From: Laetmonice hystrix
Taxonomy: Eukaryota
DNA: 64,000 bases
Reading direction: 5' to 3'
Assembly (NCBI GenBank): GCA_965235115.1
Contig: OZ249439.1
Coordinates: 33,666,001 to 33,730,000 of the forward strand
The notes beneath the pieces are model-generated. The model worked only from the letters and a program-made list of their open reading frames with translations. It was not told where the DNA came from and did not search any database. This document shows positions 5,990-57,986 of this stretch, piece after piece (position 1 is the first letter of the stretch; each line of letters opens with the position of its first letter). The position numbers and the translations under genes were made by a program.

Positions 5990-6077
5990 ATCCATACACT
6001 TCTGAGTAATCGCTGTCAATGGACATACGTATGGCGCGACATACGTGTACGTACAGACAGACAGACGGAGGTCAAAT
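5990..6077 (+). mobile_element. Left part of the 3' end of a Helentron-associated (HINE/DINE-like) repeat, split by the ISL2EU insertion
   Basis: CCATACACTTCTGAGTAATCGCTGTC...CAGACAGACAGACGGAGGTCAAAT matches the uninterrupted copy at about 47270-47345. It continues at 28940. Confidence 0.75.
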
Positions 6078-6179
6078 AGCGCTTGTCAGTGACGACGTCA
6101 TCAGAAGCTGTGTAGTGTACTACGTAGAACACAGACGGAGAGCAGGTAGGACAAACGCACGCGTGACTGCATCTGAACA

Positions 6180-6704: not shown

Positions 6705-6751
<47 letters not shown>

Positions 6752-31609: not shown

Positions 31610-32620
31610 CCCTGATGTGTAGGGTCGTCCAGTAGTAGCAGTGTTAGACCGCAAAGTCTTTAAACTAGTGTAGCAGTCCCTGATGTGTAGGGTCGTCCAG
31701 TAGTAGCCATGTTAGACCGGAATGTCTCTAAACTATAGGATAGAAGTTTCGGATGTGTCATGTCATCCAGTAGTAGCCATGTTAGACCGGAATGTCTCTA
31801 AACTATAGGATAGAAGTCTCGGATGTGTCGTGTCATCCACTAGTAGCCATGTTAGACCGGAATGTCTCTAAACTATAGGATAGAAGTCTCGGATGTGTCG
31901 TGTCATCCACTAGTAGCCATGTTAGACCAGAATGTCTTTAAACTATAGGATAGAAGTCTCGGATGTGTAGTGTCATCCAGTATTTTACCGTTTAGACCGG
32001 AAAGTCTTTAAACTTCATGTTGTGTACAAGTATACAGGATGTAGGAGTCATCTAGTAGTATACCAGTACCTCGTTTAGACTGGAAAGTCTTTAAACTTCA
32101 TGTCATGTACAAGTATATAGGATGTAGGGGTCATCTAGTAGTATACCAGTACCTCGTTTAGACCGGAAAGTCTTTAAACTTCATGTCATGTACAAGTATA
32201 CAGTATGTAGGGGTCATCTAGTAGTATACCAGTAACTCGTTTAGACCAGAAAGTCTTTAAACTTCGTGTTGTGTACCAGTACAGGATGTAGGGGTCATTC
32301 AGTAGTATACAAGTAACTCGTTTAGACCAGAAAGTCTTTAAACTTCGTGTCATGTACAAGTATATGATGTAGGGTCATCCAATGGTGCCAGTTACTGTTT
32401 TAGACCGGAAAGTCTTTAAACTTCGTGTCATGTACAAGTAAAGGATGTAGGGGTCATCCAGTAGTATACAAGTAACTCGTTTAGACCAGAAAGTCTTTAA
32501 ACTTCGTGTCGTGTACAAGTATAGGATGTAGGGGTCATCCAATGGTACCAGTTACTGTTTTAGACCGGAATGTCTTTAAACTACAGTAATTCAGTATAGT
32601 GCTTACTCGGATATATAGGG
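31610..32620. repeat. Tandem array of about 13 units (70 bp grading to about 80-84 bp) between pol and the 3' LTR
   Basis: TAGTAGCCAT at 31701, 31771, 31841, 31911 (period 70). Later TTTAGACC recurs every 78-84 bp. Shared core TTAGACC(G/A)GAA(T/A)GTCT(T/C)TAAACT. Confidence 0.9.
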
Positions 32621-33300: not shown

Positions 33301-33867
33301 CGGTAAGGGTCGCCTACTATAATGGCTATGTAGAAGCGGAGAACTACATGTGAACAGTACCGTATGGCTGTACAGTGTACATACGTGTTGGACCCAATTT
33401 ACTATTTGAAAAGTTAATTCTCTGTTTGTTGCTGAATTTCGTTTACCCATTTGGAGTTAATCATCTTGATGCCTTACATTACGATCCTACGATCATTCAA
33501 GCCAATCAAGATGGCCGTCCCCTAAGGACCTGTCGACGTGGTGTGGGAGGATTTTAGCCCAGCTACAAATGGATTTACGATCGTGATTAATTATTTTCAA
33601 CCAAAATGTTTATTAACTGATTGAGACCACATAGAATCTATTGATCATGTAAAACGCGGAACGGATTATCTCTCAGATCAAGCTTGAATCTATTCATATC
33701 GGACGATATTGGAGGAAATTCACCGGTGGCGCACGTAACCAAGGACGCACAATACACACACGTTTCCTTATACCGTGAGAACTCAAACAATCACCTCACC
33801 CGCGGTAATCACTTCAACTGCTTCTACTCAATGTGTTCCTTATACTGTAAACTCCGCACCACATACC

Positions 33868-35472
33868 ATGTCAAGCTTTCATCAACAGCCGAATGTTGCG
33901 AATGCCCAAATCAGGCCAACTTTTGCTCCACCACAATACCCGTTACCCATGGCTGGTACATTGCCCTTCACCGCCCAACAACAACCAGACATGTCTATGA
34001 TTCAAGATCAAAACAATGTACACACAAGACCTCCCACCCAACAATCGGGCCCACTGTTGGCAATGGGCTCTCAACCATGTGCTATGAATAAATCACAATG
34101 TCTAAACATACATCCAAATCTTGATGGGCTAACGCACAATGATAAAATGGAGCAGATGATGCTAAATCTCACCTCTGCCATATGCCAAGTTGCCTCCAGT
34201 ATGGAACAAATTAAAACGGCCAACAACTCGATGAGTCTTATGGTAGAACAATTATAGCGTGACGTCATAAACACTAAACAGGAACTTGATGGCACTCAAC
34301 AACTAGCACTTATCACCAGACAAGAACTTCAAGATCTCCAGGACCGAGTCACTCATTTGGACAATCGTGTTCTAACCAATGAACGTTTGGCCATGAACGC
34401 CACTTCAAGAACCTTATCCCTTGAAGGTAGAGTTACATCATCGGATCAGTTACCCCAGAATCAGCAAGCTACATATGGATCCACAAGTAACAGAGAGATG
34501 AGACTCATCATTAGAGGTGTCCCTGAGGATCCACAAGAGGATCTCGATGCTCTGGTGCAGCGCATCTTCACTACAATGAGCCTACCGTTTCGAGTCAGTG
34601 ATACAAAAGGTGTGACTCGATTAGGGAAACCCATTGAGAACAACACCTTCTCAATGGGTTCCCTACTCAACAGCAACGGTCACCCCAAATATGGACGACC
34701 CGTTATGTTGTCGCTCGACAAGATTCATCAGAAATACATAATCTTCTCACACCAGAAAAATCTGCGCAATCATGGCTTGTTTGGACGTGTGAGATTCTCT
34801 GATGACATGACTGAAGAAGAGTCTATGCACTACCGAGAAGCGAAGCAGATCTGCAATGCGATGAAACGTCACACAACTGATGTTAAGCTTCGCGGAACCT
34901 CAGTAATCATTGAGGGCAATGAATACCCATACTCCGACTTCAATAAACTGCCTTATGGTGTCACCCTCGAGTCCGCATCAACCATTGACACCTTGGACGG
35001 CATCGCTTTCCAGGGCCATTCCAGCCTTCTAAGCAATGTTTTTCCGTGTAAGTTGGAACTAAATGGAGAGAAAGCAAACAGTGTAGAGCAACTCTATGTT
35101 CTCAGAAAAGCGAAGGAATCCCTGGCCGACCCCACGCTAACTCAACAGATTAGAAATGCAACCTCCCCCTATCAGATAAAATGCCTCTCAAAAAGGATAC
35201 CATCTTCTGACAAATGGAATCAAATGTCTGTTGCAATCTTGAAGGAGTATGTGGAACTTAAATTCTTGAAATTCCCTGATCTCATGAGTAAACTCCAAGG
35301 ATGCAAGGGCGAGTTTATCTACGAGGCTACCCTTGAGAAACCCTATGGAGCTGGGTTTCTTAACGACGCACCCCAATTCTCGCATAATCAATTGAATGAT
35401 GAGTATGATAATTTAATGGGAGTTATCCTTCAAGACATTCGCAAGAAGCACAAACGTGTGGTTAAATCGTGA
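33868..35472 (+). pseudogene. LINE A ORF1: P/Q-rich N-terminus, coiled coil, RRM-like domain, C-terminal NADAR domain (about 35002-35445); one in-frame stop
   Basis: The ORF-track pieces 33775-34257 and 34357-35472 share a frame and are separated only by TAG at 34255-34257. ORF1-type motifs RLIIRGVPE, TRLGK, RPV, FSDDMT. NADAR motifs LSN.FPC, SVEQLY..RKA, W, LKF, IYEAT...YGAG, NLMGVILQDIR. Confidence 0.82.
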
Positions 35473-35737
35473 ACTGATCGTCAGTCCGCCTTTGTTTTGC
35501 CTATGGCCCTATATTTACAAACAAGCCCATAGTTTTATTTTGGTCAATGTATACACCCCTTGCACTGGGCCCTTACGTAATGGTTACGTCACGACTCTGC
35601 ATGAGTCCCACACCTTGGTTTTTACCTGAGCAGCGCCCGCACACGTACTCATTGCATTCCACCCGTCCACAAGCTGCCTTTCCCAGGATTGTATATTTAC
35701 TACCTAAATATTCGGACCTCTTTGCATATCGCCGGGA

Positions 35738-36385
35738 ATGTCCATACCACGCTTTCATTTCCTGCTTGCAGGCGACTCACGTTTACGAGGATGGCCTAGG
35801 GAAGTGAAGAGTCTTCAAAAGGAAATGGATTTATTTGACATCGAATTTCACTTCCACTATGTATCGGGCACTCGCTGCAAAAATCTAGTTGATGAAATCT
35901 ACATGTGCTCTGACTACAAGCAGTATGATGTTGTACATTTCTTAGCTGGGATAAACGAGTTCTCAACAAAACTACCGGGACACGATGTGCTACCGCGCTT
36001 CACAAATCCGAACACTGGCTTTGCGCACCTCGCTGAAGCGCGCGCGCGCCTGGATGCCATTGCCAGGTCTGTAGTGATTTGTGAGGTTATAGGCATGTCA
36101 TTTGAATTGTTTAATCACTCATTGGGAGGCTTTGGAAAACTCCAGACGGCGTTGAACAGTACTATCCTAGCAGTGAATGTCTTTGTTAGAGATCAAAACA
36201 CTGAACTTGGTGTTTTCACCCCATCGATGGAGCAACATGTACACAAAATCCGCCACGGAAAACGCAGCCATTTCTACTCTTCAACTCTCCAAGACGGCAT
36301 TCACTACACCAGTGACACCAAACGGAGATTCATCAAGCAAGTCCTCCGCACGGTGTACCAAAACATACATACCACATGCAATTAG
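35738..36385 (+). CDS. Stand-alone SGNH/GDSL-type esterase, 215 aa, intact
   Basis: Block I LLAGDSR, block II VSG, block III FLAGINE, block V LQDGIH: all four catalytic blocks present. ATG start and its own stop. Confidence 0.82.
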   Translation: MSIPRFHFLLAGDSRLRGWPREVKSLQKEMDLFDIEFHFHYVSGTRCKNLVDEIYMCSDYKQYDVVHFLAGINEFSTKLPGHDVLPRFTNPNTGFAHLAEARARLDAIARSVVICEVIGMSFELFNHSLGGFGKLQTALNSTILAVNVFVRDQNTELGVFTPSMEQHVHKIRHGKRSHFYSSTLQDGIHYTSDTKRRFIKQVLRTVYQNIHTTCN

Positions 36386-36890
36386 ATGATATATCACGGT
36401 CACAAGGACTCCTTTCGTGTGTAAATTTTTCTTTATTTTCTCACCAGACGTCGCCACCAACGAGTTGTGTTCCTATGACTCACCAAACTTTATACTACTG
36501 TCTGACACCAATACACTCTGCTTTGTGCCTGATATTTGCCATGAATTCGATACTTGAAGGGACAACCGATGTCAGTGAGTTACAACCTCCCTTTCTATCA
36601 TTTCGATACGTTCTATAATTTCTATAATGCTATATTTGTAATATTGCTCATTGCTATCAACCAACGGATATGTATATATATATTTGCTACAAGTATGGTT
36701 GACGAACGTATATCCGACGAAATTGCTGGGCGAAGAGTCCTCCCTCACCTGCCCCGTATCTGACCCTCTTGCTAGGTGTTAGATAATTACCTGTACTTCG
36801 GCACCCACCCCTGCAGCTTCTGCAATAGGGGAGTGGCACTGTTCCTACTATTGTTAGGCCTATATTCCTGGGTTATTCTCTTTTTCACAC

Positions 36891-39705
36891 ATGCCCCCAC
36901 CAGTATTATCGTCTAAAGGTTGCCGTATGGTGCATTTAAACTGCCAAAGCCTTGTTAACAAACCAAATTTAGTTAAACTTCATGTCACCCAATACTTACC
37001 GGACATATTTGGTTTATCAGAAACTTGGCTTAACACAGATCTACCTAACAGTCTATTTCTTATACCCAAATATGACTTCATCAGAGTTGATCGAGCCTGG
37101 AGTGCACCGGGGAAACCTAATATTAAGCGAGGAGGAGGAGTAGGCTTATACATCAAATCTGACTTACATTACTCCCAATTTGAATATGCTCACCTAAATA
37201 GTAGCACGAGTGACATTGAGATAGAGTGGGTAAGCATCCACCAACCTAACCAGAAAAAAATTGTAATTGGCAACCTTTATAGACCGCGCGACGGCGACAC
37301 CACAATATTTTGTAATTTATTGAGCAATATGGTCAACGAAATATCCTCAAGAAAGAATTCAGAAATTTTTGTATTAGGTGATTTCAACATCAATTATTCT
37401 AAAGCTGGGACACCTGCTAAACAAAACATCCAGGAATTTGAGTCAGTGACTGGTCTTAAACAACTCATTCATGAAACTACTAGATTTTCTGATTCTAACT
37501 CATGTATTGATCTGATTTTCTCGAACTCTGACACCATCTCACAGTCGGGTACTCTTCATATGAACATTAGCGATCACGAAGCCATTTTTGTTACAAGAAA
37601 GAAACTCGAGCATAAAGTCGGTCGCATAAACTCACAAGGGAGAACTTACTCGAAATACGACAGATTGAAATTTGTGGATTCACTGAGGAACATTGATTGG
37701 GAACCGTTTGATAGCATTACTGATCCGAATGAGGCATGGATCTTCTTGAAAGATACTATCACTAACGCCATAAATAAACAGTGTCCAATCAAACAAATTA
37801 AAATAAAAAATAAAAATGACCCATGGATGTCACAGGAACTAATTGAGCTAATAAATGATAAAGATAATGCCAGGCGGGAAAGCAAAAAAATCTAATCTGA
37901 CCGACGATTGGACAAGAGCACGGCGCCTTAAACATCTTGCAAACAGAGCCGTGAATAATGCCAAACGTGATTTTATCTTAGAGAATCTTCAAAATCAAAA
38001 TGATGCTAAAAGTTCTGGGAATGTATCAGTTCTATCCTTCCAAAAGACAATCCTCATACTACAATTAATCTCACGCATCAAGACACTGGACTCCCCATTG
38101 ACCCTGATAAGAGTGCCAGTACTTTAAATGAATTTTTCACGGGCATAGGTCCTAAATTAGCAGTCAAATTCACAGATCCTTGGGACACCGTCCTTCGCCG
38201 CTACTAAGTCAGAAATTTGTAATTGTGATATCAAAGTAGACGAAGTAAATCGTCCGCTTTAAACAACTTGTCTTCAATGATCCTTAAACACGCTTTCCTA
38301 GGTATACGGGATAAAATTACTCATTGTTTCAATTTGTCTTTAAAAACTGGAATTTTCCCTTTGGATTGGAAAATGGCCAAGGTAGTTCCCTTGTTCAAAG
38401 GTGGCGATGCAGCAAATGTCTCTAACTATCACCCCATATCTCTGTTACCCCTCCGAGGTAAACTACTAGAGAAATTGGTTCATACTCACCTTGAGAAATA
38501 TATTGAGGATCATCACATCCTAAGCATCCATCCGGGAGGTTTTAGACAAGGGCATTCAACACTTCAATCAATTGGAGAGCTAACTGATGATATTACCTAC
38601 AACATTAACAACCTGAATAGCACACTAGTAACTTTTATCGATCTCAAAAAAGCTTTTGATACAGTAGACCACGATATCATGCTTAAAAACCTACACAGAT
38701 TGGGTATCAAAGGCTCGACACATAACTGGTTAAGTTCGTATCTCTCCAATAGATCCCAACAAACAGTTGCAAATAACTCAACCTCAACAGCACTTCCCAT
38801 TAATTGCGGAGTGCCACAGGGTTCTATTTTAGGACCATTCCTCTTTCTAATTTATATTAATGACCTAGGTATGACTCTCCACTCAACATCTTCTAAACTT
38901 TATGCTGATGATACAGCTCTATACGTACATGGGGATAACATTCTGGATCTAGGAACTCGACTGCAGCAGGGCCTAGATGACCTTGACCACTGGTGCTCAC
39001 TGAACAAGTTGTCAATAAATGCTTCCAAGACTAAATGCATGTTTTTCCCGGCTAAGCGCCCAAGTTCAACTACTATACTCCCCAAATTAATCCTAAATGA
39101 TCAGACTTTAAACTATGTAAATCAATATAAATACCTAGGTGTCACTCTGGACAATAAATTGACTTTTCAACCTCATCTGCAACAGACAATAAAATTAACA
39201 TCCCATAAAATTTACCTCCTGGCCAAAATTCGACATCTCTTGACGGATGAAGCCGCATTGGCTGTCTACAGATCCAAGATAATTCCCTATTTCGACTATG
39301 GAGACATTCTTTTTCATAATAGCAGTGCTACAAAATTGAAGAAGCTTCAACGACTCCAAAACCGCGCCCTGCGAATTTGCCTGAGATCAGATCCACTCAC
39401 GCCCGTAGATATGCTACATAATAGAGCAAATATGCCATATTTATCAAATAGAAGAATTGCTCACATCAGGACTTTTGCCTTCAAAAGAGCCACGCTTCAA
39501 AAATACCTATGTCCCCCCACTAGGAATACAAGAGCAAATGCTGCAAAGCAATTAAAATTCTGGTTAGCACACAATAATCAAGTAGCCTGCTCAGTAAATA
39601 ACACATGCGCACGTGAATGGAATCTCCTATAAGAAACATTGTAAATTTGTATCATTCAAGCACTTCAAATATAGGCAGAAATTATGGCTGAAATCAACTA
39701 TACCA
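36891..39705 (+). pseudogene. LINE A ORF2: APE endonuclease + reverse transcriptase, frameshifted at about 37890 and 38130-38270
   Basis: HLNCQS, LSETWL, RGGGVGLY, GNLYRP, GDFN, CIDLIF, SDH; NYHPISLL, GFRQGHST, FIDLKKAFDTVDH, GVPQGSILGP, LYADDT, YKYLGVTLD. Confidence 0.93.
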
Positions 39706-39749
39706 ATAACCTAACCTGTGTTTAATACTTGCCTGTCACGCCCCATCAC

Positions 39750-40215
39750 CAGATTGTGTTCCTGTGACCTAAATGACTCAACACTGTCTACGGGTTGTCC
39801 ACATATGACCTCTGTAGTAACTTCCCTTCGCCAACGGACAACGCTACGCTCATTTTTCATCTTCGGGTCATGCTCTTGCAACCCTGATCTCCAGGATGTG
39901 CTCAGATGTCCTATGTTGATCCCTGTATTAGAAATTACTGTTGGCGTCATACTACACTCCACCAAATCTTGATCTTCGGGTTGTGTTCTTACGACCCTCA
40001 TCTCCATGATATGTTCTGATATCATATGAAATCTTATCGCCAGGTTGTGTTCATATGACCTAAACGACTCAACACTGTCTACGGGTTGTCCACATATGAC
40101 CCCTGTAGTAACTTCCCTTCGCCAACGGACAACGCTACGCTGATTTTTCATTTTCGGGTTGTGCTCTTGCGACCCTGATCTCCAGGATGTGTTCAGATGT
40201 CCTAAGTTGATCCCA
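39750..40215. repeat. Imperfect tandem duplication, period 291 bp, directly after LINE A ORF2
   Basis: CTCAACACTGTCTACGGGTTGTCCACATATGACC...GATCTCCAGGATGTG at 39777 and 40068. Confidence 0.85.
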
Positions 40216-40925
40216 TAAATTCATCTGATGGCCTACCCTGTTTGCTGGCCTTCGCTTTTCATACTCTCATTACCAACCACTATGTATCTGAATTTGTTAC
40301 GCCGGGCTGTGGTCATGTGACCTTCATCACCATATTGTGCTCCTGTGAATTATGACCGTGCAATCTATAGTATACAGTAGGGCTATGCTGAATAACACTG
40401 GGACACATGAAAAACCCTTTCGGGGGATGTGACGCCCCAGTATAAATAAACGCCTTAAAAAAAACTATGAGCACCGCCACCGCCGGCCCCGGCACTCCCA
40501 CCCCCCGGCATGCCGCCTCTCATCCCGGGCAGCTATTAACTATGGCCTAGGCTAGACTATAGAGTTAGAACTTGACCCGCCCCCACCTGATGAGATCGAG
40601 TCCCTATGGAAGCTAGACTAGATCATTATTAGCTTAGATAGACCTGATCCTCCGACTTTCTCCCATCTCCCGGCAAACAATAGTTTTTCTAGGCTTTTCT
40701 AGACATGAAAACAGACGGTACCTGAGGCTGAATAGAGGTCTACCACGAGAGATGAGAACAGATGGACGTGGCCAAGCTGGACTTCACGAACTGGGGCAGG
40801 GTCTAGGCTAGACCAAGAATAAGATGATTTCGAGCAGAACGCCAGAACTACACCTGCAGCTGTCCTGTCGCCTGCACACAGCCAACGGTTACTAACGTTA
40901 GTCATCGGTGCCGAACACGTTACAA

Positions 40926-41976
40926 TATGCATTGAAAATTGGAGCCCTTCGTGAAGTTTTACCATATTTATTTCGAATCCAGGACAATTAGACACCGGAC
41001 AATTAGACACCGGCCAGTCAGACACCGGACAATTATACACTGGACAATTAGACACCCTAGAAAGTGGCAAAGTAGGACAACTAGACACCCGCATATAATG
41101 TGACATAATATATAATTGAAGTATACGTGTGAGTATGTATGAGTATGTTAGCCCTAACCCTAACCCTAACCCAAACCTAACCCTAACCAGACAAGTGCTG
41201 GTTTATCTGATTCCTTTACTTTTAGCAATATATTTTATAGAGGGTGTCTAATTGCCCGGGTGTCCAACTGTCAGGTGTCTAATTGTCCAGGTGTCTGACT
41301 GTCCGGTGTCTAACTGGCCAGTGTCTAATTGTCCGGTGTCTAATTGTCCGGATACCATTTATTTCTGTGTTGCAGGGGTGTAATGGTCCTAACTGCAACA
41401 GCTCCACCCCACGTGCAGAAAGTGTTGGTGGAAAATTTGGAATTTGTTGATGTTAAGATTGTGACCACAAATCCAGACAGGCCGAATATATGCTATAGTA
41501 TATTCCCCAGGGGCCCTACCATCTATCAAGAGGACCACATGGACATATTCATACATGAACTAGCAACCCAGTTAATGGACAGACAAAACGAATTCCCCTT
41601 ACAGTTGTATACACTGATTTTAACACAATTATACACTGCATGGAAGAATTTATTCCTACCCATGTCAAGTACAATGATGATGAACAAATACCCGAAAATT
41701 TGCTGTTTAATCAGTATCATGTGGCCTCAACAGAAAGAATGAAGCAATGTATCTAGGCAGAACTTTTCAAAGATTCACCAAAACTTTGCCTGCTCTTCGC
41801 AACAATTGCACTTGGAATGGGATTAGATGCCAGGCACATAAGACGTGTCATCCACTACAAACCCCCTACCAGCATTGACAGATATTATACAAGAGACTGG
41901 CCGTGTTGGACGTGATGGTTTACCTTCTGAAGCCATTTTATATTATAATGCAACTGATATCCGCAAGAACAGACCT
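40926..41976 (+). pseudogene. RecQ-type helicase C-terminal remnant, probably from an Academ transposon; two frameshifts, one stop, one MITE insertion
   Basis: KIGALREVLP, VLTATA, NPDRPNI.Y, LFATIALGMGLD, IRRVIHY.PP, QETGRVGRDG.PSEA.LYY. The Academ origin is inferred from Academ elements being known to carry RecQ domains. Confidence 0.7.
40975..41356. mobile_element. MULE/Foldback-like MITE with 9-bp TSD, 15-bp subrepeats in its arms and a (TAACCC)n centre
   Basis: ATTTATTTC is duplicated at 40966-40974 and 41357-41365. The arms are arrays of GGACAATTAGACACC and its inverse. TAACCC repeats at about 41148-41188. Confidence 0.8.
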
Positions 41977-43767
41977 CGTCTCGTTTGTGCCCGTGGGGAC
42001 TTATCCATAGGCGGCGGAACCGGGGGGGAGGGGGGGGGGGGGGGGGGGGGTTAGTGGCAACCTCGCAATGAAAAGTGTGCATGGTAGGATTTAATAGGCT
42101 TCACCCACGCAGGGGCAGATCCAGATGGGTGGAGGTAATTCTCCCCCTTGAAAATGACTATCCAATCTTTTCCCACCTTACTTTGCTCTTCTTTAAACTT
42201 TCATTGATCCCCCCTCCCCAAATTACCCCATATGTACACACTTTCATGCTTTGAAGCAATTTCCATGAAAATTTTGTGTCCAGATACCGTAACTTACGGC
42301 CTCCCCAAATGAAAAAAGTCGGGGACAATTCCCGAACCCCCTCCACGGGCGGATCCAGGTTTGCGCCAACGGGGGTGTTGCGAGGGGCCAGGGGGCGCCG
42401 CTTTGTGTGAACAAAAAGCAGGAAAAAGGACAAATTATTTCGTAACGGGTTGTTGCAACCCCGGTAGCTCCCCCCCCACCTTAAATCCACCACTGCCCTC
42501 CCCTTCCTCACCGCATGAACGTTTCCATGGAGGAAAACGCTGAGTTGACATTTTATTTTTCATTTTTTTCTGGGGGAGGGACCCCAGGACCCCAGCGCCC
42601 CCCCCCCCCCCGCTCGAGGCTTTGGCCTTCAGCGCTTGCATAGCCCGCATTTCAAATCTTGGAGCTTGTGACCTATGTCATTCGAAGATTTCAACATGGC
42701 CGACTGAGCACACACCTCAGAGTCAGCTCCTCCACATTACCTGTAAATTCTTAGCCTCACGTGCACACTGGATATTATTAACATCTCAACACCGACCTCT
42801 TACCTTGCTAAAACCAGTGGGAACTACAAAAATGCCAAGACCCAAAGAAAAAGCTGGAAAAAAGGGCGAACAGAGTAACGACGGCGACGACTCCTTGCAA
42901 GTGAGTGATATTACACTAACTAATACAACTGGTGCGGACCCCGTTGGCCTCAACGATCTCATGCGGGAAATCCTAAAAACCCAAAAAGGGAATGATCGCC
43001 TACAAAAAAACCTGGCGGACGTTGTCTCATCTATTGCGGCCACAAACGAAAAGTTAGACTCTCACATCAAGTCAGTGGAATCAATTGTCAGTGCCGTGAA
43101 TACCAAATGTGACGCACTTGATGTGCGGATTGAACAGTGCGAAGCAAGCAACTCACAACTCTCGGACCAGCTGAACGACGCACACGCCAAAATCAAGAAA
43201 CTTGAAACGAAATTGAACTCTATTGAAACAAAGTTAGACGCATATGAGAATGATAGGAGAAGAAAAAACATCATAATCGAAGGCTTATCTGAGGGGAACG
43301 AGAATGTCAGGGCTACGGTAACAGATCTGCTCAATGACCTGAACGTTGAGTTGGGGGTCTGTACTATGGAAAGCGTGTACAGGCTTGGCCCTAAGAAACA
43401 AAACACCACCCGCCCAAGACCTATCAATGGTGAAATTCCCATCACAGAATGCAAGACAGGAAATATTCAAACATGTAGCTGAATTAAAAGGCAAGACGAA
43501 ATGGGAGCATGTATATATCACAGACGACCTGACCCCACAGGCAGCGAGTGAGCGCCGTGACCTGCGGGCAATCGCGGCAGCTGCCCGGCGACAAGGCATC
43601 CATGCTAAAATTAAAGGCGGCGCTATAATTATTGATGCCAGGAAATTTTCCTACAAGGACATTAACGATCTTCCCCATGGCCTGTCGTTAGAGTCTGCAA
43701 AGATGGTTGAAGTCAAGGACGGGCTCGCATTCCAGGGGCACCACGCATTTCCCTCCAATATACATGT

Positions 43768-46700
43768 GGGCCAGTTTTTCTAGAAATGTACAATTCGCCC
43801 TCAGCGGCCAAGAGAATATGGAATTTTTAAAACTTTTCCCAACCTATATCATTTGCATTGATTATGATAAAGGAACATTCTATCTTTCTGAAAAAGTTAA
43901 TTATACTCAGGAATTCCCATCCAGTCAGTTTTTAGAGCCCTCAAAAAAGATGTACTTCGTTTTCGTGGAACGTGAGTAAGATTTTGGACATTGCTTCAGA
44001 TATTTGCAATTTCCTTCTCTTGTATTTAAATGAACAAAGTTATATTTGGCCCATTAAATTTTAACAACATTCCCCTGATATGTGCCAAATATGAACAATA
44101 TGGGGCAAATATGAACTTATGAAACAGTTTGCCAAAATATAGGTCTGAAATTGCCAAAATTCCTGGATCATGTCCATCAGATATTCACAATATTCTATAT
44201 TCTCTAGTTCTTTTTAGGTGCCAAATATGCATGTTAAAACTGTTTTATTAACTTTTCACACATCTTATTATTATAAAACAAGCATTATATTTCATTTCTA
44301 TCCGATTTCCATGTTGCAGTAAGCTAATAAATTGACACCTATTATTATTACTCACGTTCCCAAAAAGGTTACTCACGTTCCGCCAAGTCCATACTTTTAT
44401 CAAAAGCAGACTAAATAAGATCGAAAACGCCCAAAAAGTTTTATTTAGACTGTAAACATATCAAATTTATTTTATCTGTGAAAACTTCATCAGAGGCACA
44501 TAAATTTCAAAAATGTTCCAACAAAGAAAAAACTTCACCGATGAAAATTACTTTGCAATTTCTCACATGAATTTTCTCCCTTGAAAAACTCTGAATAATA
44601 AAATATTTTTACACCAATTGCATGCTCAAACCCTCCTGTACATGATTCAATCAGTTAAAATTCGTTGATTTTGCATTACATGGCTGTGAAGCCCTTGGAA
44701 TAAGAACATTTGATATATTACTCACGTTCCCTAAAAAAGTTTCTCACGTTCCTCAAGGACATCAATTTTCCCAAAGGCACTTATGAAGGTCAAATATGAT
44801 CCAATACTCTCGAAAATTTATATTTAAACCATAAAAATGTTACATTCCTTGATTTTATCATGGAAAACTTCATCATAGCCCATAAATTCCCAATATGTTA
44901 CCTTGAAGAAGAGACTTTGCTGATTAAAATTATTTTGCAATTTCTCGCATGAATTTTCTCCCTTGAAAAACTTGGAATAACAAAATAGTTTTACAACAAT
45001 TGCATTCTCAAACCCTCATGTACATGATTCAATCAGTTCAAATTCGTTGACTTTGCCTTGCCCTGAACTCCCCCCCCCCCCTTCAAATTCGTTGACTTTG
45101 CCTTGCCCTGAACTACCCCCCCCCCCCCCCCCCGACTTCCGCCTTCTTCTTTAGCCTCTAGTCCAGCTGGGACTCTGTATTCATCCTCCTCCTCATGACT
45201 GCGAAACTTGTGACCTATGAAAATACTTAAACATGTTATAAAGGCTCAAACAAACAAAATGGAATATATACATGTTTAAAATAAGTCAATGTCTTGGTGG
45301 ACCCAGGATTGTTCCTATTTTTAATGTAAGATTAACAAGCTTGTGAAGCTTATAGCCCCCACCACGAACTATGGATTCTTGAAAAAACGATGCACGACTT
45401 CAATTGATCTTTGAAGGGCAAAGGAAATATTGTCAAATGAAACTTTGTAAACTTAGTAAAGTTCTATGCAGTTATATGTACAGCTTGATGGCGTTATCCG
45501 GCGTAAAGATGCATGTGTCTGCATTAACTATGCAGTTATGTACAGTTTGATAGTGTTATCCGACATGAAGTGTTGTAGACATGCTTGACCTCGATTGACC
45601 TTTAGAGGTCAGTTATGTACAGTTTGATAGCGTTGTCTGGCGTGAACCAACTGAGTAGGGACAAATTATCTGTGGGTCCAGGAACTATGCATACTTTTGG
45701 CACGCTTGTTGCCCCTCATGCCTTCTGTCAGCAAGAATGAAATCCAGAAAATGTTATTGCTTCGAATTTCTTTAAATCCAAGATGGCCACCAAGCAGCCA
45801 TTTTTAATGATATATTTGACCTGTGTCCTCCTTAGACTGTCCCTGGTTATTATGTAATGTTTCATGCAAGATTAGATGTTGTTATTTTCAACTGGTTTGG
45901 AGGTACAGGCCATTAAAATATGCATGACCTTGATTGACCTTTCAAGGTCGCTCAAGGTCATGGAAAATGACGCCAAATGAAACTTCATATATGACTTCCT
46001 ATCTATCAATAATAATAACTGTTGCCTTATCTTGCACCGTTTTCGAGATATGAGTCAAAGCAGTGTTATGGGGGGGGAGTAAAATATTAATATGGCCGCC
46101 ATGTCGCCATATTTCCTCTGATCTAGAAATACATTGGCATATACATTGCCCCTCATATACACCTTCTTTCCACCAAATTTGAAAGAAATCGGGATCGTTT
46201 TGTCTGAGTTATTGTTCCAAATGTGTTTACATCCAAGATGGCCACCACGCGGCCATTTTGACTGATGTCTAAAATATATTTGACCTGCCTCATCCGTGGA
46301 CTGTCCCGGATCATTATGTAATGTTTCATGCAAGATTATGTCGTTATCTTTAACTGTTTTGAAGATCCAGGCTATTGCAAATATGCATGACCTTGATTGA
46401 CCTTTCAAGGTCGCTCAAGGTCATCGAAAACGGCGCCAAATGAAACGTCATAATTATATGACTTCCTATCTGTCAATAATAATAACTATTGCCTTATCTT
46501 GCACCGTTTTGGAGATATGAGCCAAAGCAGTGTTATAGGGGGGAGGTAAAAATATTAATATGGCCGCCATGTCGCCATTTTTGCTCTGATCTGGCAATAC
46601 ATTGGCATATACATTGCCCCTCATATACACCTTCTTTCCACCAAATTTGAAAGAAATCGGGATCGTTTTGTGCGAGTTATTACTCCAAATGTGTTTACAT

Positions 46701-49452
46701 CCAAGATGGCCACCACGCGGCCATTTTGACTGATGTCAAAAATATCTTTGACCTGCCTCATCCGTGGACTTTCCCGGATCATTATGTAATGTTTCATGCA
46801 AGATTATGTCGTTATCTTTAACTGTTTTGAAGATCCAGGCTATTAAAAATATGTATGACCTTGATTGACCTTTCAAGGTCGCTCAAGGTCATCGAAAATG
46901 GCGCCAAATGAAACGTCATATATGACTTCCTATCTATCAATAATAGGAACTATTGCATCATCTTGCACCGTTTTCGAGATATAAGCCAAAACAGTGTCAT
47001 TGTGGGGGTCAAGAAACAAATATGGCCGCCATCTCGCCATTTTGGATCTGAATTGAAATTTTATTGTGATGCATATTGGCCCTCATTATGCCTCATCCCT
47101 GCACCATGTTTGAAAGAAATCGTCATTGTTTTGGCTGAGTTATTGCTCAAAATGTGTTTACACTCAAGATGGCCGCCAAGCGGCCATTTTGAATGATATC
47201 AAAAATCTGTTTGACGTGCATCATCCGCAGTTCATCCCTGATCCTTGTGTAAAGTTTCAAAGAAATCGACCCATACACTTCTGAGAAATCGCTGTCTACG
47301 GACATACGGAGGGACGGAGGGACGGACGGACGGAGGTCGAATTATAAGCCCCCCGTTGTGGGGGCTAAAAAGGAGGGACAGGCCTGTGGGACAGTCAAGT
47401 AGAATTGCCAAAAAAGTGCCACTTCAAAACCAATCAACTATCCAGGGGTTGGGGCCTGTTCTACTTTTGGAACGTGCTTTTTGCATCTCAAAAAGCCACC
47501 AGCCACTAGATAAGAGGCTGGACACACAAGGCCTGGCATTCCATTGTTACGCAGGGTCGGTATTCAACCCAGCCATGTCCAGCACCAAAAAATGAAATAT
47601 GTCAGAATGACCAAAAAAAATAAATTTCTAAATTTGGATTCATTTCTGTGGTATATCTAAAGGTAATGCATAAACACATCTGAATTTAGAATATTATTGG
47701 GATTGAAATATTTTTTCAATTTGTTGTTGTTGTTGTGGAGTGTTGTAGAGCAGTTGTGGAACGTGAGTAAGTTTTTTTTACCCAACGCTGAGAGAAGACA
47801 ACATATAAATATCTATTCAAATACATATATTTTGAATCTTGTCATCATTAGTATTATGAAATAACATAGAGGAAGTCATGTGAGCCTGCTGTCGTTTATA
47901 AAAAACAGGGTTTGTGATATTTGGAGGAACGTGAGACACTTTTCTTACTCACGTTCCCGATTCATGAATTTAATGCATTTTTCTCAGCGTTTACATTAAT
48001 GAAAAGGCCAAACATAGGTTCATTTTATAAAAGAGATAATGAACAAATGATTTAATTGTGTTTAATAATAAATGATAAGATAACAGCACTTCAAAACAGC
48101 GATGATATTGGACAATAAAGATAGAGGGAACGTGAGTAAGGGGTATAGTAAGGGGTATATTCGAACCTACGATGGACAACGTTAAACCACCTAAACGGAG
48201 ACACATTTATATCTTTATTCATTCATATTTATGCACAATTACTTGGCCAAAGTTGAAAAATAACATCAAATATAACCTCTGAAATGGCTCACTATTCATA
48301 TTACTCACGTTCCACTTCTCACGGAATGAAACGACCTTGAGTCGTTTGAAAGCAGCCAGCGAAATGCCTGCTGTATTACCGCTCAAGCACGAGGCACTAT
48401 TGGAAACATCAATCTTTCCCAAAGTTAAACAAACATTGCAAGAAGGGTTAATTACATTTCTATATTTTGTCAATTAGATCCAAAACGATGCCTTTCACAT
48501 CCGGACTGGCATTTGCCAACATGTATACATCCATAATTCTGTAGAAATGCTTTATAATGTTTCAAAAAGTGCTAGATACTTACCACGCTTTCGACTTTCC
48601 TCTTTACCACAACGCGCTGTGGCGTTCTATCCAGTGAACAGGGTAAAAATGCGGTGAGATGCTTTCCCCCATTACTCACGTTCCCATCTCTCTCACGTTC
48701 CAACATTCGAAATTTCTATCATAAATGCAGTTCAAAGGGCCGTTTCTTCTGAAGTAATCTTATTTATAGAATGAATGATCTAGCAAGGAATGTAATGAAA
48801 TGTTAAATGTGCAAGATATTATCTTATGTGGAAGTTAAATGAGATCTTCCATCTGAGGAACGTGAGAAACATTTTTGGTATAAAACCAGACTGCTGAGAT
48901 TTGGGAGTTAATAACTTTTTCACTGCTCTGGCTACACCAATAGGAATTTAACACAATATAGAGAAATACATGTAGATTACAGCAATGGATATACTTCTGT
49001 TTTATAAGTGTTCAATGTGATAAAGTATAATAGAAGAAAAAGAAGTTTTGCACGTTCCTAAAAATTGACACAAAATCTCCATCCTCCATCAAAAAAACCC
49101 CCACCACCTGGTTGGCCTGGAATACACCTTGAATGTCAATATAGCCATGATAGATCAATGAGCAAGTATCAAAATAAGGATCCCAATGTGTTTGTAAACG
49201 ATATAGGGTGTCAAAGCCTTAATTTATGAGCAAAAAAGGTAATTTTCCTCAATTTTTCAGTTTCTATTAGTTGCAGTTTGTTAGGAGTTGTACCAAAGTA
49301 TAACAATGTATATATTTTATGAAAGCTTAGGATGTCCTGCATGAAATGTTACCAACAAGGGGACCCTAGGCGGTAGTAGTCATGATTTACAGGCTTGTGA
49401 AGAGATCAAGGTGTGATTTTGGCCAATTGTACATTTCTAGAAAAACTGGCCC
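43768..49452. mobile_element. Non-autonomous TIR transposon with 4-bp TSD and GGG termini (Sola2-like)
   Basis: 28-bp perfect TIR GGGCCAGTTTTTCTAGAAATGTACAATT. ATGT at 43764-43767 and 49453-49456. About a dozen TTACTCACGTTCC / GGAACGTGAG motifs. No transposase ORF seen. The Sola2 label rests on the termini and TSD length only. Confidence 0.75.
45334..47369 (+). mobile_element. HINE/Helentron-associated element carrying about 3 tandem 465-bp units
   Basis: Starts AACAAG with TATAGCCCCC near 45351. GACCTTGATTGACCTTTCAAGGTCGCTCAAGGTCAT at 45926, 46389 and 46857. (GGAC/GGAG)n at about 47300-47337. 3' hairpin AGCCCC...GGGGCT at 47347-47364. Confidence 0.75.
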
Positions 49453-49950
49453 ATGTACCCATGCACAATTACATACAACGGAGGCTCTTACACTTCTGCA
49501 GAGCAGCTTTATCAAGCGGAGAAGGCGCGCTACTGCCACGACCCTGTATCCGAGGATCTGATTTGTAAGGCTGAAAGCCCGTACGAAGCCATGATACTTG
49601 GTAAACTAATCAAATCTACCGGCGAATGGGACAAAAACAAATTAAAGGTCATGAAACGGGTTGTCACACTTAAGTTCGATCAAAATGACGCCATTAGGCA
49701 GAAATTGCTTTCAACAGTTGGTAACCTGTATGAGGCCACTCTTGACAGGGTCTACGGTTGTGGGTTCACGCTCGGCCAGTGCCACATGATCTCACAAGAC
49801 AATGTCAAAAGCAACAATCACCTGGGCAAAATCCTGTGCGAATACAGAGGGGCATTGAAATATTGCTTATGTTAGTGTTAGTTAACTTGTAAAGCTTGTA
49901 ACGTTTATAGCTCGGCATTCGGGAACTAGATTAATATTAAGAACGGTTTA

Positions 49951-50580
49951 TTGTCATATATCTATATTGTTCAACATTTTGCCACACATCCAGAGCCTAA
50001 TCCCCTGTTTGTACCCTACTTACAGCATTCGAGCCAATCTATATTGGTCCTCGCCGACTCACGTGGGAGAAACCTGCAACAAGCTCTAAACAAAGAACTG
50101 AGCGGACAAAGCCTACCGGCCCGATTCAATGTACAAGTAAAGGTTTTCAGCGGGGCCAAAATCCAAGATTTGACAACCTATGCAAAGACCCACCTGGACT
50201 AGGCCCGCCCACTTGACTATATTTACCTGTTTGGAGGTGTAAACCACCTATCTGTGAAACATCGCTCAGGCGTAGTAACGGCCGCGTTTGATGACATTTC
50301 CAATCTTGTAGACACGATGACTGATTACTTCGAAAATGCCCGATCTGATTTATCTCCCTTTGCTAAGAATGTTGTGATTTGCCAGCTTGTGGGTATCAAC
50401 CTAGATGTATATAAGAAACAAAGCAACTCCCAAACCTTTGGGCAACATATTATCGACCAGTCCTTGCCTCACGTTAACCATGCCATTAACCTTATGAATC
50501 GTGATGGCAATGTTCGAAGTCCCTGGTTGCAAACCACGGTCCATGCTAAAATACATCATAGGCTCTGCCATAAGTTCCCA
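49951..50580 (+). pseudogene. LINE B SGNH esterase ORF; one in-frame stop, 3' end replaced by a tandem repeat
   Basis: ILVLADSR, VFSGA, YLFGGVN, VVICQL.G are collinear with copy A. TAG at 50200-50202 is in frame. No DxxH block seen. No in-frame ATG. Confidence 0.75.
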
Positions 50581-57982: not shown

Positions 57983-57986
57983 TTAA

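What the first reader, a model, noticed from the sequence alone, without database searches (positions are those of the whole stretch)
33868..39705. LINE retrotransposon whose ORF1 is fused to a NADAR (ADP-ribose-processing) domain
Seen in the sequence: a CR1/L2-type ORF1 (coiled coil, RLIIRGVPE...RLG...RPV...SDDMT) runs in frame into a domain with the NADAR/YbiA signature (SN..PC, EQLY...K, W, KF, YEAT...G.G, N..G.IL..IR), upstream of an APE-RT ORF2. Established: NADAR proteins reverse guanine ADP-ribosylation of DNA (DarT1 antitoxins), YbiA is an N-glycosidase, and CR1-group ORF1s are known to carry esterase, PHD, zinc-knuckle and sometimes macro domains. I know of no described NADAR-bearing LINE ORF1. 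Inference: the element may carry its own eraser for ADP-ribose marks on its RNA, cDNA or target DNA. That would be a counter-defence analogous to viral macrodomains, possibly against host PARP or pierisin/CARP-1-like guanine ADP-ribosyltransferases.
Basis: partly seen in the sequence, partly recalled or inferred. Interest (0 to 1): 0.92.

Follow-up and report, generated by a model that had tools for sequence, protein, structure and literature searches.

The report
LINE ORF1 protein carrying NADAR hydrolase
This is a dead copy of a jumping gene (a LINE retrotransposon) whose RNA-coating protein ends in a well-preserved NADAR enzyme, a type known to strip ADP-ribose from DNA and RNA bases. The fusion is real and very widespread, but it was already noted once in passing for oyster LINEs, and its role is untested.

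Summary
ORF 34357-35472 joins an L1-type ORF1p (RRM + C-terminal domain; Z 10.2 to human L1 ORF1p) in frame to a NADAR domain (Pfam E 1.4e-14; Z 18.4 to 8BAU). An SGNH-like esterase ORF and an APE-RT ORF2 follow.

Corrections:
- The element spans 33514-40464 and ends in AATAAA plus poly(A), not at 39705.
- This copy is dead: a 5' frameshift, one stop in ORF1, and ORF2 broken at 37.9-38.3 kb.

The fusion is family-wide. The genome holds 592 to 741 candidate copies, many with open frames. At least 150 clusters in public data match full length (1,636 at E<=1e-30), and two outside samples link it to APE-RT. The two catalytic glutamates are near-invariant; the lysine is K/R in 71%. Synonymous sites between families are saturated while NADAR stays 52-68% identical.

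The novelty claim fails. Genome Biol 2025 (PMC12477816) already reports NADAR in ORF1 of oyster LINEs. This scan has also reported the same fusion several times on other DNA of this genome.

Counter-defence against base ADP-ribosylation remains plausible but untested.

New here: two Gypsy-type LTR families in the same genome carry NADAR inside Pol.

The parts
33514..40464 (+). Whole LINE copy (6.95 kb), degenerate
   Evidence: Similarity to the 95-97% identical copy on G000:C3 (L002, L027, L033, L034) begins at 33514 and ends at 40464. The flanks are unrelated. No clear target-site duplication was seen.
33868..35472 (+). ORF1 reading frame (frame 1), interrupted by a stop at 34255-34257. The first in-frame ATG is at 33868. 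The true N-terminus lies further upstream in the sister copy but is frameshifted here (a 14-base length difference at about 33760).
   Evidence: Translation; stop map; L002 keeps one frame from further upstream; first Met.
34150..34488 (+). Probable coiled-coil region of ORF1p (approximate limits)
   Evidence: Region aligned across families with helical character. Helices 2-23 and 34-46 in the model. The match to the L1 ORF1p trimer starts at model residue 31-38. Limits are inferred.
34489..34806 (+). RRM domain of ORF1p (aa 45-150; RLIIRGVPE ... RLG ... RPV)
   Evidence: Z 9.2 to the human L1 ORF1p central domain 2W7A, rmsd 2.9 A, 89 residues aligned, model range 45-150.
34807..34977 (+). C-terminal domain (CTD) of L1-type ORF1p (aa 151-207)
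   Evidence: 2YKP_A (L1 ORF1p trimer): Z 10.2, 145 residues aligned, model 38-207 against chain 146-320. Also 2LDY, RRM-CTD.
34963..35463 (+). NADAR domain, YbiA type (aa 203-369; Pfam core 35020-35448)
   Evidence: PF08719 E 1.4e-14. TIGR02464 E 6.4e-13, below its cut-off. 8BAU Z 18.4 and YbiA 2B3W Z 14.7.
35086..35088 (+). Codon of Glu244, catalytic Glu of helix 1 (taken as equivalent to E43 of P. nicotianae NADAR)
   Evidence: phmmer alignment to 8BAU. Residue roles from PMC11543638. Invariant in 26 of 26 genome copies and E in 145 of 149 public representatives.
35107..35109 (+). Codon of Lys251, phosphate-binding Lys (taken as equivalent to K50)
   Evidence: Present in this family, but K or R in only 106 of 149 representatives (M, C, H, A elsewhere).
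35323..35325 (+). Codon of Glu323 (YEAT), the last-strand Glu that defines the YbiA family (taken as equivalent to E125)
   Evidence: E in all 141 representatives that cover the position.
35738..36385 (+). Separate 215-aa ORF (frame 2), SGNH/GDSL esterase-like (GDS ... DGIHYT)
   Evidence: ORF. No Pfam hit for this copy. Its 37%-identical homologue in L032 hits Lipase_GDSL weakly, E 1.4e-3, below the cut-off. The segment 35716-36396 is missing from the 95-97% identical C3 copy.
36870..37895 (+). ORF2, apurinic-type endonuclease (APE) domain
   Evidence: PF03372 E 2.3e-11 and PF14529. Collinear with aa 10 onward of the open 970-aa ORF2 of L031.
37893..38267 (+). Broken stretch of ORF2: nine stops in the ORF2 frame, with an open piece in another frame (two compensating frameshifts inferred)
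38268..39632 (+). ORF2, reverse transcriptase and C-terminal region
   Evidence: PF00078 E 2.7e-37. 62% identical to the L031 ORF2.
39633..40464 (+). 3' UTR with an internal 179-base repeat (39745-39923 and 40036-40214, 93% identical), AATAAA at 40445-40450 and an A8 tail at 40457-40464
   Evidence: The related element L031 likewise ends in a poly(A) run about 1 kb after ORF2, preceded by AAATAAAAG.

Best explanation
SHOWN: window 33514-40464 is an inactive copy of a poly(A)-tailed LINE. Its ORF1 protein is an L1-type RNA-coating protein (coiled coil, RRM, CTD) extended in frame by a YbiA-type NADAR domain that keeps the full Glu/Lys/Glu catalytic set. A small SGNH-like esterase ORF and an APE-RT ORF2 follow. 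ORF2 in open relatives is about 970 aa, with no RNase H or CCHC domain detected by Pfam, which fits the CR1/L2-like superfamily.

The fusion is the normal state of a very large and old group of LINE families. The NADAR part is the best-conserved part of ORF1.

INFERRED mechanism: ORF1p trimers coat the element's own RNA, which places many NADAR active sites directly on the template RNA and next to the nascent cDNA and the nicked target. There the domain acts as an N-glycosidic ADP-ribosylhydrolase. It removes ADP-ribose attached to guanine or cytosine bases of RNA or single-stranded DNA, lesions that would otherwise block reverse transcription. Such marks would be written by host nucleic-acid ADP-ribosyltransferases of the pierisin/CARP-1 kind. 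On this reading NADAR is the element's own eraser, analogous to Macro and NADAR domains in RNA-virus polyproteins.
For: Domain identity:
- Pfam NADAR E 1.4e-14.
- Fold Z 18.4 to 8BAU and Z 14.7 to YbiA; Z 10.2 to L1 ORF1p RRM-CTD.
- Catalytic residues aligned with those expected in 8BAU.

Family-wide fusion:
- At least 110 scored matches among 592 candidates with the ORF1-NADAR protein.
- 150 scored among 741 candidates with the Pfam model, mostly inside open frames of 400-480 aa without stops.
- Open relatives: L031 has ORF1-NADAR of 627 aa and ORF2 of 970 aa.
- A second, 35%-identical element in the same window.

Outside this genome:
- 1,636 cluster representatives at E<=1e-30. Most of the best 150 span RRM to NADAR; one, a Haliotis protein, matches the NADAR part only.
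- ORF1-NADAR lies next to APE-RT ORFs in ENA ERZ26222911 and Logan ERR14368249.

Selection:
- Between families pS is 0.75-0.9 (saturated) while NADAR pN is 0.2-0.35.
- NADAR identity (0.51-0.68) is usually above that of RRM-CTD (0.28-0.68).
- E244 is E in 145 of 149 representatives, E323 in 141 of 141, K302 in 143 of 143 and W287 in 135 of 143.

Chemistry and context from the literature:
- NADAR and YbiA enzymes remove G-ADPr and C-ADPr from ssDNA and ssRNA, and an animal (sponge) NADAR is active (PMC12945103; PMC11543638).
- CARP-1 homologues are found mainly in Bivalvia and also in Cnidaria and Porifera.
- NADAR occurs in polyproteins of invertebrate RNA viruses, largely to the exclusion of Macro (PMC9503650).

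Convergence in this genome:
- Two Gypsy-type LTR families also carry NADAR, inside Pol.
Against: - No enzymatic, expression or genetic data exist. No RNA runs are available for this organism.
- The phosphate-binding Lys is not conserved. It is K or R in 71% of representatives and M, C, H, A or L in the rest. A basic residue at +5 to +7 is present in 117 of 145. Substrate binding may therefore differ in many lineages.
- No host guanine ADP-ribosyltransferase was found in this genome. The searches with PF02917 and PF01375 were blank, but the controls were blank too, so this says nothing.
- YbiA-family enzymes also act on small molecules such as riboflavin intermediates.
Confidence: 0.45

Rival explanations
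1. The NADAR domain acts on small or RNA-terminal ADP-ribose derivatives, not on ADP-ribosylated bases. Candidates are by-products of RNA repair or tRNA-splicing-type chemistry, NAD-derived immune signals, and NAD caps on the LINE RNA. In that case it serves RNA processing or maturation, or quenches signals.
For: Iyer et al. 2022 propose soluble ADPr derivatives, RNA-repair by-products and NAD-cap products as NADAR substrates (PMC9503650). The Ectocarpus authors suggest RNA processing for TE NADARs (PMC12477816). The best NCBIfam hit is the YbiA-type small-molecule N-glycosidase model (E 6.4e-13, below its cut-off). The variable phosphate-binding Lys suggests altered ligand contacts.
Against: For RNA-virus NADARs embedded in polyproteins, the same authors favour macromolecular adducts. 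Fusion to an RNA-coating protein points to a polymer-bound substrate. All tested NADAR and YbiA family members act on base-ADPr.
Confidence: 0.2
2. The domain works mainly as a binding module. It reads ADP-ribose or nucleic acid and brings the RNP to ADP-ribosylated chromatin or DNA nicks, with little or no catalysis.
For: The phosphate-binding Lys is replaced by M, C, H, A or L in about 29% of representatives. ORF1p is a structural protein.
Against: Both catalytic glutamates are essentially invariant across at least 141 diverged lineages. That conservation is hard to explain for a pure reader.
Confidence: 0.1
3. The domain is an N-glycosidase for another substrate, such as damaged or modified bases or nucleotides, or riboflavin-pathway intermediates as for E. 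coli YbiA. It would be unrelated to ADP-ribose.
For: YbiA was first characterised as an N-glycosidase of riboflavin intermediates. TIGR02464 similarity.
Against: A metabolic house-cleaning role gives no obvious benefit to a LINE or a Gypsy element. E. coli YbiA itself hydrolyses G- and C-ADPr.
Confidence: 0.1
4. The NADAR stretch is a chance similarity, or a host exon picked up by only these copies.
For: None beyond the fact that this particular copy is degenerate.
Against: Pfam score above the gathering cut-off, fold Z 18.4, hundreds of copies in the genome, at least 150 diverged clusters elsewhere, and purifying selection.
Confidence: 0.01

Closest known systems
ORF1 proteins of Repbase 'Tx1' LINE families of Crassostrea gigas with YbiA-family NADAR domains (one sentence in PMC12477816, Genome Biol 2025)
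   Same: A LINE ORF1 protein carrying a YbiA-type NADAR domain in a marine invertebrate, with function unknown. This is almost certainly the same phenomenon.
   Different: Those families are labelled Tx1 (L1 superfamily). Here ORF2 is about 970 aa, Pfam detects no RNase H or CCHC domain, its match to human L1 ORF2p is weak (E 1e-17 to 1e-19, extending into the linker but not the APE or C-terminal regions), and its C-terminal motifs look CR1/L2-like. It comes with an SGNH esterase ORF and has a PHD-bearing relative. The clade was not tested by phylogeny, and I could not see the Repbase sequences. The paper gives no analysis of architecture, abundance, conservation or selection.
[quoted passage not shown]
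   Same: A retroelement-encoded YbiA-family NADAR conserved across families. This genome also has Gypsy-type Pol proteins with NADAR between the protease and RT.
   Different: A different element class and a different fusion partner (Pol rather than ORF1p), in a brown alga rather than an animal.
NADAR and Macro domains in polyproteins of positive-strand RNA viruses of invertebrates (PMC9503650)
   Same: A parasitic RNA replicon carries an ADP-ribose-processing domain, presumed to erase host ADP-ribosyl marks. The hosts include bivalves, annelids and crustaceans.
   Different: In viruses the domain sits with the RdRP in a polyprotein. Here it is fused to a nucleic-acid chaperone or coat protein of a nuclear retrotransposon.
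DarG1/NADAR antitoxins of DarTG1 and phage orphan NADARs (PMC11543638, PMC11825919)
   Same: The same fold and Glu/Lys catalytic core. The proposed logic is also the same, namely erasing guanine ADP-ribosylation to protect a replicating genome.
   Different: DarT1-linked NADARs use Asp in the last strand and phage NADARs use His, whereas this one has the YbiA-type Glu. There is no DarT partner, and the setting is eukaryotic.
Human LINE-1 ORF1p (coiled coil, RRM, CTD; PDB 2YKP, 2W7A, 2LDY)
   Same: The fold of residues 38-207 matches RRM plus CTD (Z 10.2), with a preceding helical region.
   Different: L1 ORF1p ends after the CTD. Here a 165-residue enzyme domain follows, and no Pfam L1 ORF1 model is hit.
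CR1/L2-like LINEs with esterase and PHD accessory domains (from my own knowledge: Kapitonov and Jurka 2003; ZfL2-1 esterase, Schneider et al. 2013)
   Same: Accessory hydrolase modules upstream of APE-RT. The GDS ... DxxH esterase motif is present at 35738-36385.
   Different: Here the esterase is a separate ORF that is present or absent even between 95-97% identical copies. NADAR is an additional module that I did not find described for CR1-like elements in the held library.

Membership tests
NADAR superfamily (Pfam PF08719) | Sequence match to the family model above the curated cut-off | tested here: met
   E 1.4e-14, 55.1 bits against a cut-off of 35.1, model positions 10-161 of 163.
NADAR superfamily (Pfam PF08719) | YbiA fold (five core helices flanked by small sheets) | tested here: met
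   AF2 model residues 203-369: Z 18.4, rmsd 2.8 A, 165 aligned to 8BAU; Z 14.7 to 2B3W.
NADAR superfamily (Pfam PF08719) | Catalytic Glu and Lys of helix 1 (E43 and K50 in P. nicotianae numbering) | tested here: met
   E244 and K251 align with the SEQ..K motif of 8BAU. Family-wide, E is present in 145 of 149 representatives and K or R in only 106 of 149.
NADAR superfamily (Pfam PF08719) | ADP-ribosyl N-glycohydrolase activity on guanine- or cytosine-ADPr | not testable with these tools
   Needs an enzyme assay.
YbiA family within NADAR | Glutamate in the last strand (Asp in the BC4488/DarG1 type, His in the phage type) | tested here: met
   E323 in YEAT aligns with the YEAS motif of 8BAU. It is E in 141 of 141 representatives. 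Definition from PMC11543638 and PMC11125620.
YbiA family within NADAR | Equivalog-level match to the riboflavin-intermediate N-glycosidase model TIGR02464 | tested here: not met
   49.2 bits against a cut-off of 73.7. It is related to the E. coli YbiA enzyme but is not an equivalog of it.
DarTG1 antitoxin NADAR | Asp in the last strand, a conserved K115-type Lys and a neighbouring DarT1 gene | tested here: not met
   Glu rather than Asp. The neighbours are LINE ORFs. The weak hit to the NF053876 anti-phage NADAR model scores 19.6 bits against a cut-off of 240.
L1-type (type II) ORF1p | RRM followed by the L1-specific CTD | tested here: met
   Z 10.2, 145 residues aligned, model 38-207 against 2YKP chain 146-320. 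RRM alone Z 9.2 to 2W7A.
L1-type (type II) ORF1p | N-terminal trimeric coiled coil | tested here: inconclusive
   Long helices lie upstream of the RRM and the Foldseek match includes the trimer entries. Trimerisation was not modelled, and the region is broken by a stop in this copy.
Autonomous APE-type LINE | APE endonuclease plus RT in ORF2 downstream of ORF1, with a 3' poly(A) or repeat tail | tested here: met
   PF03372 and PF00078. AATAAA plus poly(A) at 40445-40464. The relative L031 has an open 970-aa ORF2.
CR1/L2-like (Jockey superfamily) clade | RT phylogeny placing the element in that clade | not tested
   No named reference RT sequences were available. Indirect hints only: ORF2 of about 970 aa with no RNase H or CCHC domain detected by Pfam, a weak match to L1 ORF2p, an esterase ORF, a PHD-APE-RT relative at 28% identity, and C-terminal motifs recalled from memory.
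CR1/L2-like (Jockey superfamily) clade | 3' end made of short tandem repeats rather than poly(A), as is typical of vertebrate CR1/L2 | tested here: not met
   The element ends in AATAAA-N6-A8, and the sister copy has a longer A run. L031 also ends in poly(A). This weakens but does not exclude CR1/L2-like placement.
Tx1 clade (label used in PMC12477816 for the oyster NADAR LINEs) | L1-superfamily ORF2 (about 1,200-1,300 aa with a C-terminal Cys-rich motif) and site-specific insertion | tested here: inconclusive
   ORF2 is about 970 aa and no Cys/His motif is seen in its C-terminus. Copies are dispersed over many chromosomes. No phylogeny was made, and the Tx1 criteria are from memory.

The most novel reading that the evidence does not exclude
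Base ADP-ribosylation of RNA and DNA by CARP-1/pierisin-type transferases may be an unrecognised innate defence of marine invertebrates against reverse-transcribing elements and RNA viruses. LINEs (through ORF1p), Gypsy-type LTR elements (through Pol) and RNA viruses (through polyproteins) would then each have captured NADAR erasers as counter-defence. This genome shows two of those three routes side by side.
Probability: 0.25. Interest if true: 0.85.

Novelty: new member of a known kind. Interest (0 to 1): 0.55.

Why it matters
If the NADAR domain is an active eraser of base-linked ADP-ribose, these LINEs would be the first retrotransposons shown to carry a counter-defence enzyme against nucleic-acid ADP-ribosylation. 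They would also point to an undescribed host restriction pathway in invertebrates.

The scale makes this more than a curiosity. There are hundreds of open copies in this genome and more than a thousand diverged clusters in public data. A second retroelement class in the same genome also carries NADAR.

The family offers a large natural set of eukaryotic NADAR variants for working out substrate specificity, including lineages that replaced the phosphate-binding lysine.

As a sequence observation it is not new. It has been noted once in the literature and several times by this scan.

Tried and rejected
- The search for homologous proteins with the 371-aa ORF1-NADAR gave no hit at E<=1e-5. The same tool with the NADAR region of the Gypsy Pol gave none at E<=1e-10. 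Both are blanks of a word-indexed search and mean little, because the exhaustive HMMER search found thousands.
- Clade naming through homologue names failed. The 71 ORF2 homologues carry almost no informative names, and the Atlas gave only generic RT clusters.
- A search for host pierisin- or cholera-type ART families in this genome (PF02917, PF01375) found nothing. The control genomes were blank too, so this is uninformative. No Pfam accession for CARP-1-like ARTs was known to me.
- Expression could not be checked. Only three runs from one study and one sample hold the sequence, and none is on record as RNA.
- No target-site duplication was recognisable at either copy.
- No LTRs were found within the 8 kb fetched around the Gypsy-NADAR Pol.
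The architecture survey therefore rests on a few loci.
- dN/dS could not be given as a ratio between families because synonymous sites are saturated. The within-family pair (window against C3 copy, omega 0.73 on few changes) reflects decay after insertion.
- Rejected readings: chance similarity, host-exon capture, and a NADAR pseudogene of a host gene.

Full report
**1. What is at the coordinates**

The + strand between 33.7 and 39.7 kb carries a series of ORFs.
- A frame-1 reading frame runs 33775-35472 with a single in-frame stop at 34255-34257.
- A 215-aa ORF lies at 35738-36385.
- ORF2 occupies two frame-3 pieces, 36891-37895 and 38268-39632.

Pfam places NADAR (PF08719) at residues 222-364 of the 371-aa ORF, with E 1.4e-14 and 55.1 bits against a gathering score of 35.1. 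It places Exo_endo_phos on the first ORF2 piece and RVT_1 (E 2.7e-37) on the second. NCBIfam gives the YbiA-type model TIGR02464 at E 6.4e-13, below its equivalog cut-off.

**2. Structure**

An AlphaFold2 model of the 371 residues, built on an alignment of 26 genomic relatives, has mean pLDDT 80.9.
- Residues 203-369 superpose on the Phytophthora nicotianae NADAR-ADP-ribose complex 8BAU at Z 18.4 (rmsd 2.8 A, 165 residues) and on E. coli YbiA at Z 14.7.
- Residues 38-207 superpose on the RRM plus C-terminal domain of human LINE-1 ORF1p at Z 10.2 (145 residues). The RRM alone gives Z 9.2 (Foldseek E-values).

ORF1p here is thus an L1-type (coiled coil, RRM, CTD) RNA-coating protein with an enzyme domain appended. 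It is not a CR1-specific ORF1 type.

**3. Catalytic residues**

Schuller et al. (PMC11543638) define E43, K50 and E125 of the P. nicotianae enzyme as mechanistically relevant. Cihlova et al. (PMC11125620) use the last-strand residue to separate the subfamilies: Glu for YbiA, Asp for DarT1-linked and His for phage NADARs.

phmmer aligns window E244, K251 and E323 with the SEQ..K and YEA(S) motifs of 8BAU, where those residues are expected. The residue numbering is inferred, not read off the structure. The codons are at 35086, 35107 and 35323. This is a YbiA-type NADAR with a complete catalytic set.

**4. True extent and state of this copy**

A 95-97% identical copy on another chromosome (G000:C3; loci L002, L027, L033, L034) shares sequence with the window from 33514 to 40464 and no further. 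The element ends in AATAAA (40445-40450), six bases and an A run. I saw no target-site duplication.

The window copy is dead.
- Relative to the sister copy, a 14-base length difference at about 33760 puts the 5' part of ORF1 out of frame.
- ORF1 has the stop at 34255.
- ORF2 leaves and re-enters its frame between 37893 and 38267.

The sister copy has its own defects. It carries a 1.75-kb insertion inside NADAR at a TTAAA site, and it lacks the whole segment 35716-36396 that holds the esterase ORF. Its deletion junction shows a short microhomology.

**5. The fusion is the family's normal state**

Within this genome:
- A six-frame search of the 627-Mb genome with the ORF1-NADAR protein scored at least 110 matches among 592 candidates. 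Identity ranged from 24 to 95%, and most lay in open frames of 400-627 aa.
- The Pfam NADAR model scored 150 of 741 candidates, all above the cut-off.
- L031 holds a relative with both reading frames open: ORF1-NADAR of 627 aa and ORF2 of 970 aa. It has no esterase ORF and ends in poly(A) about 1 kb after ORF2.
- L032 holds another lineage with ORF1-NADAR, an esterase ORF and ORF2.
- The window itself holds a second element only 35% identical in NADAR, interrupted by insertions.

Outside this genome:
- A profile of the 26 proteins searched against 1.84 billion cluster representatives found 1,636 at E<=1e-30. Most of the best 150 span RRM to NADAR in a single stretch; several are truncated or NADAR-only, and one is the Haliotis protein noted in section 10.
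- In two outside samples the ORF1-NADAR gene lies just upstream of APE-RT ORFs. These are ENA ERZ26222911, which has a 220-aa ORF in between, and Logan ERR14368249, which has a 964-aa ORF2.
- Atlas neighbours hint at annelids. This is a lead only.

**6. Selection**

Between families synonymous sites are saturated (pS 0.75-0.9). Non-synonymous divergence in NADAR is only 0.2-0.35. NADAR is usually more conserved than RRM-CTD, for example 52% against 30-44% identity.

Conservation in the 26 genome copies:
- S242, E244, A252, W287 and K302 are invariant.
- E323, A324, T325, G331 and G333 are nearly so.

Conservation in 149 public representatives:
- E244 is E in 145.
- E323 is E in all 141 that cover the position.
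- K302 is K in 143 of 143.
- The phosphate-binding Lys is the exception. It is K in 67, R in 39, M in 16, C in 7, H in 7 and A in 5. A basic residue at +5 to +7 is present in 117 of 145.

That pattern argues for a retained catalytic function, with lineage-specific changes in ligand binding.

**7. Which LINE clade**

The evidence is indirect.
- ORF2 is about 970 aa, and Pfam detects no RNase H or zinc-knuckle domain.
- It matches human L1 ORF2p only weakly, at E 1e-17 to 1e-19.
- It has a 28%-identical relative with a PHD-APE-RT architecture.
- An SGNH-like esterase ORF accompanies it. The motifs GDS ... DGIHYT are present, and the L032 homologue hits Lipase_GDSL at E 1.4e-3, below the cut-off.
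- From memory, its C-terminal motifs resemble CR1/L2-type ORF2.

The poly(A) tail is atypical for that group, and I could not run a phylogeny with named references. The only published mention calls the oyster families 'Tx1'. Whether these are the same lineage remains open.

**8. What is already known**

PMC12477816 (Genome Biol 2025) describes NADAR in Ectocarpus Gypsy Pol. It adds that Repbase ORF1 proteins of several C. gigas 'Tx1' LINE families also carry YbiA-family NADAR domains, and suggests a role in RNA processing. Full-text searches found no other paper linking NADAR, YbiA or DUF1768 to LINEs.

The scan's own notes show that the same fusion was reported and followed up several times on other pieces of this genome, with the same conclusion. 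I re-read the paper myself and agree. The fusion is therefore not new as a kind. What I add for this locus:
- the corrected boundaries and state of the copy;
- the fold evidence;
- the residue statistics;
- the present-or-absent esterase module;
- the Gypsy observation in section 10.

**9. How it most likely works (inference)**

ORF1p of L1-type elements coats its own RNA in cis as trimers. This is established knowledge for L1 and is only inferred here. A NADAR domain on every subunit would then patrol the template RNA, the nascent cDNA and the single-stranded target.

The supporting literature is as follows.
- NADAR and YbiA-family enzymes remove ADP-ribose from guanine N2 and from cytosine in ssDNA and ssRNA, and a sponge NADAR is active (PMC12945103).
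- CARP-1-type DNA ADP-ribosyltransferases are found mainly in bivalves and also in cnidarians and sponges.
- NADAR and Macro domains are largely mutually exclusive in polyproteins of invertebrate RNA viruses, where they are read as erasers of host ADP-ribosyl marks (PMC9503650).

The simplest reading is that the LINE carries its own eraser of base-linked ADP-ribose. I give this 0.45. The rivals are action on small or terminal ADPr derivatives or NAD caps (0.2), a mainly binding role (0.1) and another N-glycosidase substrate (0.1).

**10. Side finding that bears on the interpretation**

Two NADAR matches in the genome lie in open frames of about 1,650 aa. One of them (L037) is a Ty3/Gypsy-type Pol with these domains:
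- aspartic protease at residues 82-170;
- NADAR at 349-490 (E 1.3e-29);
- RT at 652-812;
- RNase H at 875-1004;
- integrase at 1239-1410.

A second family, 56% identical, also has an open Pol of 1,667 aa. The Gypsy NADAR is 31-40% identical to LINE NADARs. It keeps the helix-1 Glu and Lys, but has His (VHAC) where the LINEs have Glu (YEAT), which is the phage-type residue.

Two classes of reverse-transcribing element carrying NADAR in one animal genome argues that the domain helps such elements in this host. It is hard to explain as an accident of one lineage. I found no note of this in the scan. The literature search turned up only the brown-alga case.

Separately, the abalone protein XP_048255699 (4,240 aa) contains seven NADAR repeats and no ORF1p part.

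**11. Verdict**

The fusion is real, family-wide and selected. Its function is untested. The novelty claim is wrong.
- Novelty class: new member of a known kind.
- Interest: moderate (0.55). The biology is potentially important and directly testable, but the sequence observation is already in print and has been made repeatedly by this scan.

Noticed in passing
L037 (G000:C1:23016500-23024500), ORF 2824-7797; also G000:C8:28856242-28857294 and G000:C7:33147372-33148361: Ty3/Gypsy-type LTR retrotransposon Pol proteins (1,649-1,667 aa, open frames) carry a NADAR domain between the protease and RT (PF08719 E 1.3e-29). There are two families, 56% identical. The NADAR has His where the LINE NADARs have the last-strand Glu. 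This parallels the Ectocarpus Gypsy NADAR, but in an animal genome.
   Followed up: partly
window 35716-36396 against L027 about 1911 (G000:C3): The 681-base segment holding the SGNH-like esterase ORF is present in the window copy and precisely absent from the 95-97% identical sister copy. The junction shows a short microhomology (ATATTCGG / ATATCACGG). More distant families also occur with (L032, ERZ26222911) and without (L031) this ORF, so the esterase behaves as an optional module.
   Followed up: partly
window 43391-59194 (+): A second, distantly related NADAR-LINE. ORF1 is at 43391-43765, NADAR at 49453-49848, APE at 51627-53176, and RT at 53133-53693 and 58640-59194. It is split by insertions of about 5.7 kb and about 4.9 kb. 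NADAR is 35% identical to the first element.
   Followed up: partly
P0021 = XP_048255699.1, Haliotis rufescens LOC124129589 (4,240 aa): An annotated abalone protein with seven NADAR domains (PF08719 E 1.9e-256). The last five are spaced 642 residues apart. It has no RRM-CTD part, and its NADAR is 21% identical to the window's. It may be a host multi-NADAR gene or a mis-modelled repeat array.
   Followed up: partly
P0065, P0092, P0060, P0098, P0108, P0076 and about 18 others: About 24 of 132 public ORF1-NADAR representatives continue 100-350 residues past the NADAR domain. These tails have no Pfam hit and no similarity to the esterase ORF. They may be a further accessory module.
   Followed up: no
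L002 about 2361 and L027 about 1514 (G000:C3): The sister copy has a roughly 1.75-kb insertion inside its NADAR domain, flanked by TTAAA / TTTAAA. This looks like a TTAA-targeting DNA transposon or MITE.
   Followed up: no
window 32011-32585: A tandem array with a unit of about 83 bases lies just upstream of the element, seen as staggered self-matches of 81-94% identity.
   Followed up: no
window 40982-41351: Two 15-base tandem arrays in opposite orientation (GGACAATTAGACACC and GGTGTCTAACTGTCC) flank a short CCCTAA x6 telomere-like run at 41152-41188. A G29 run lies at 42022-42050.
   Followed up: no
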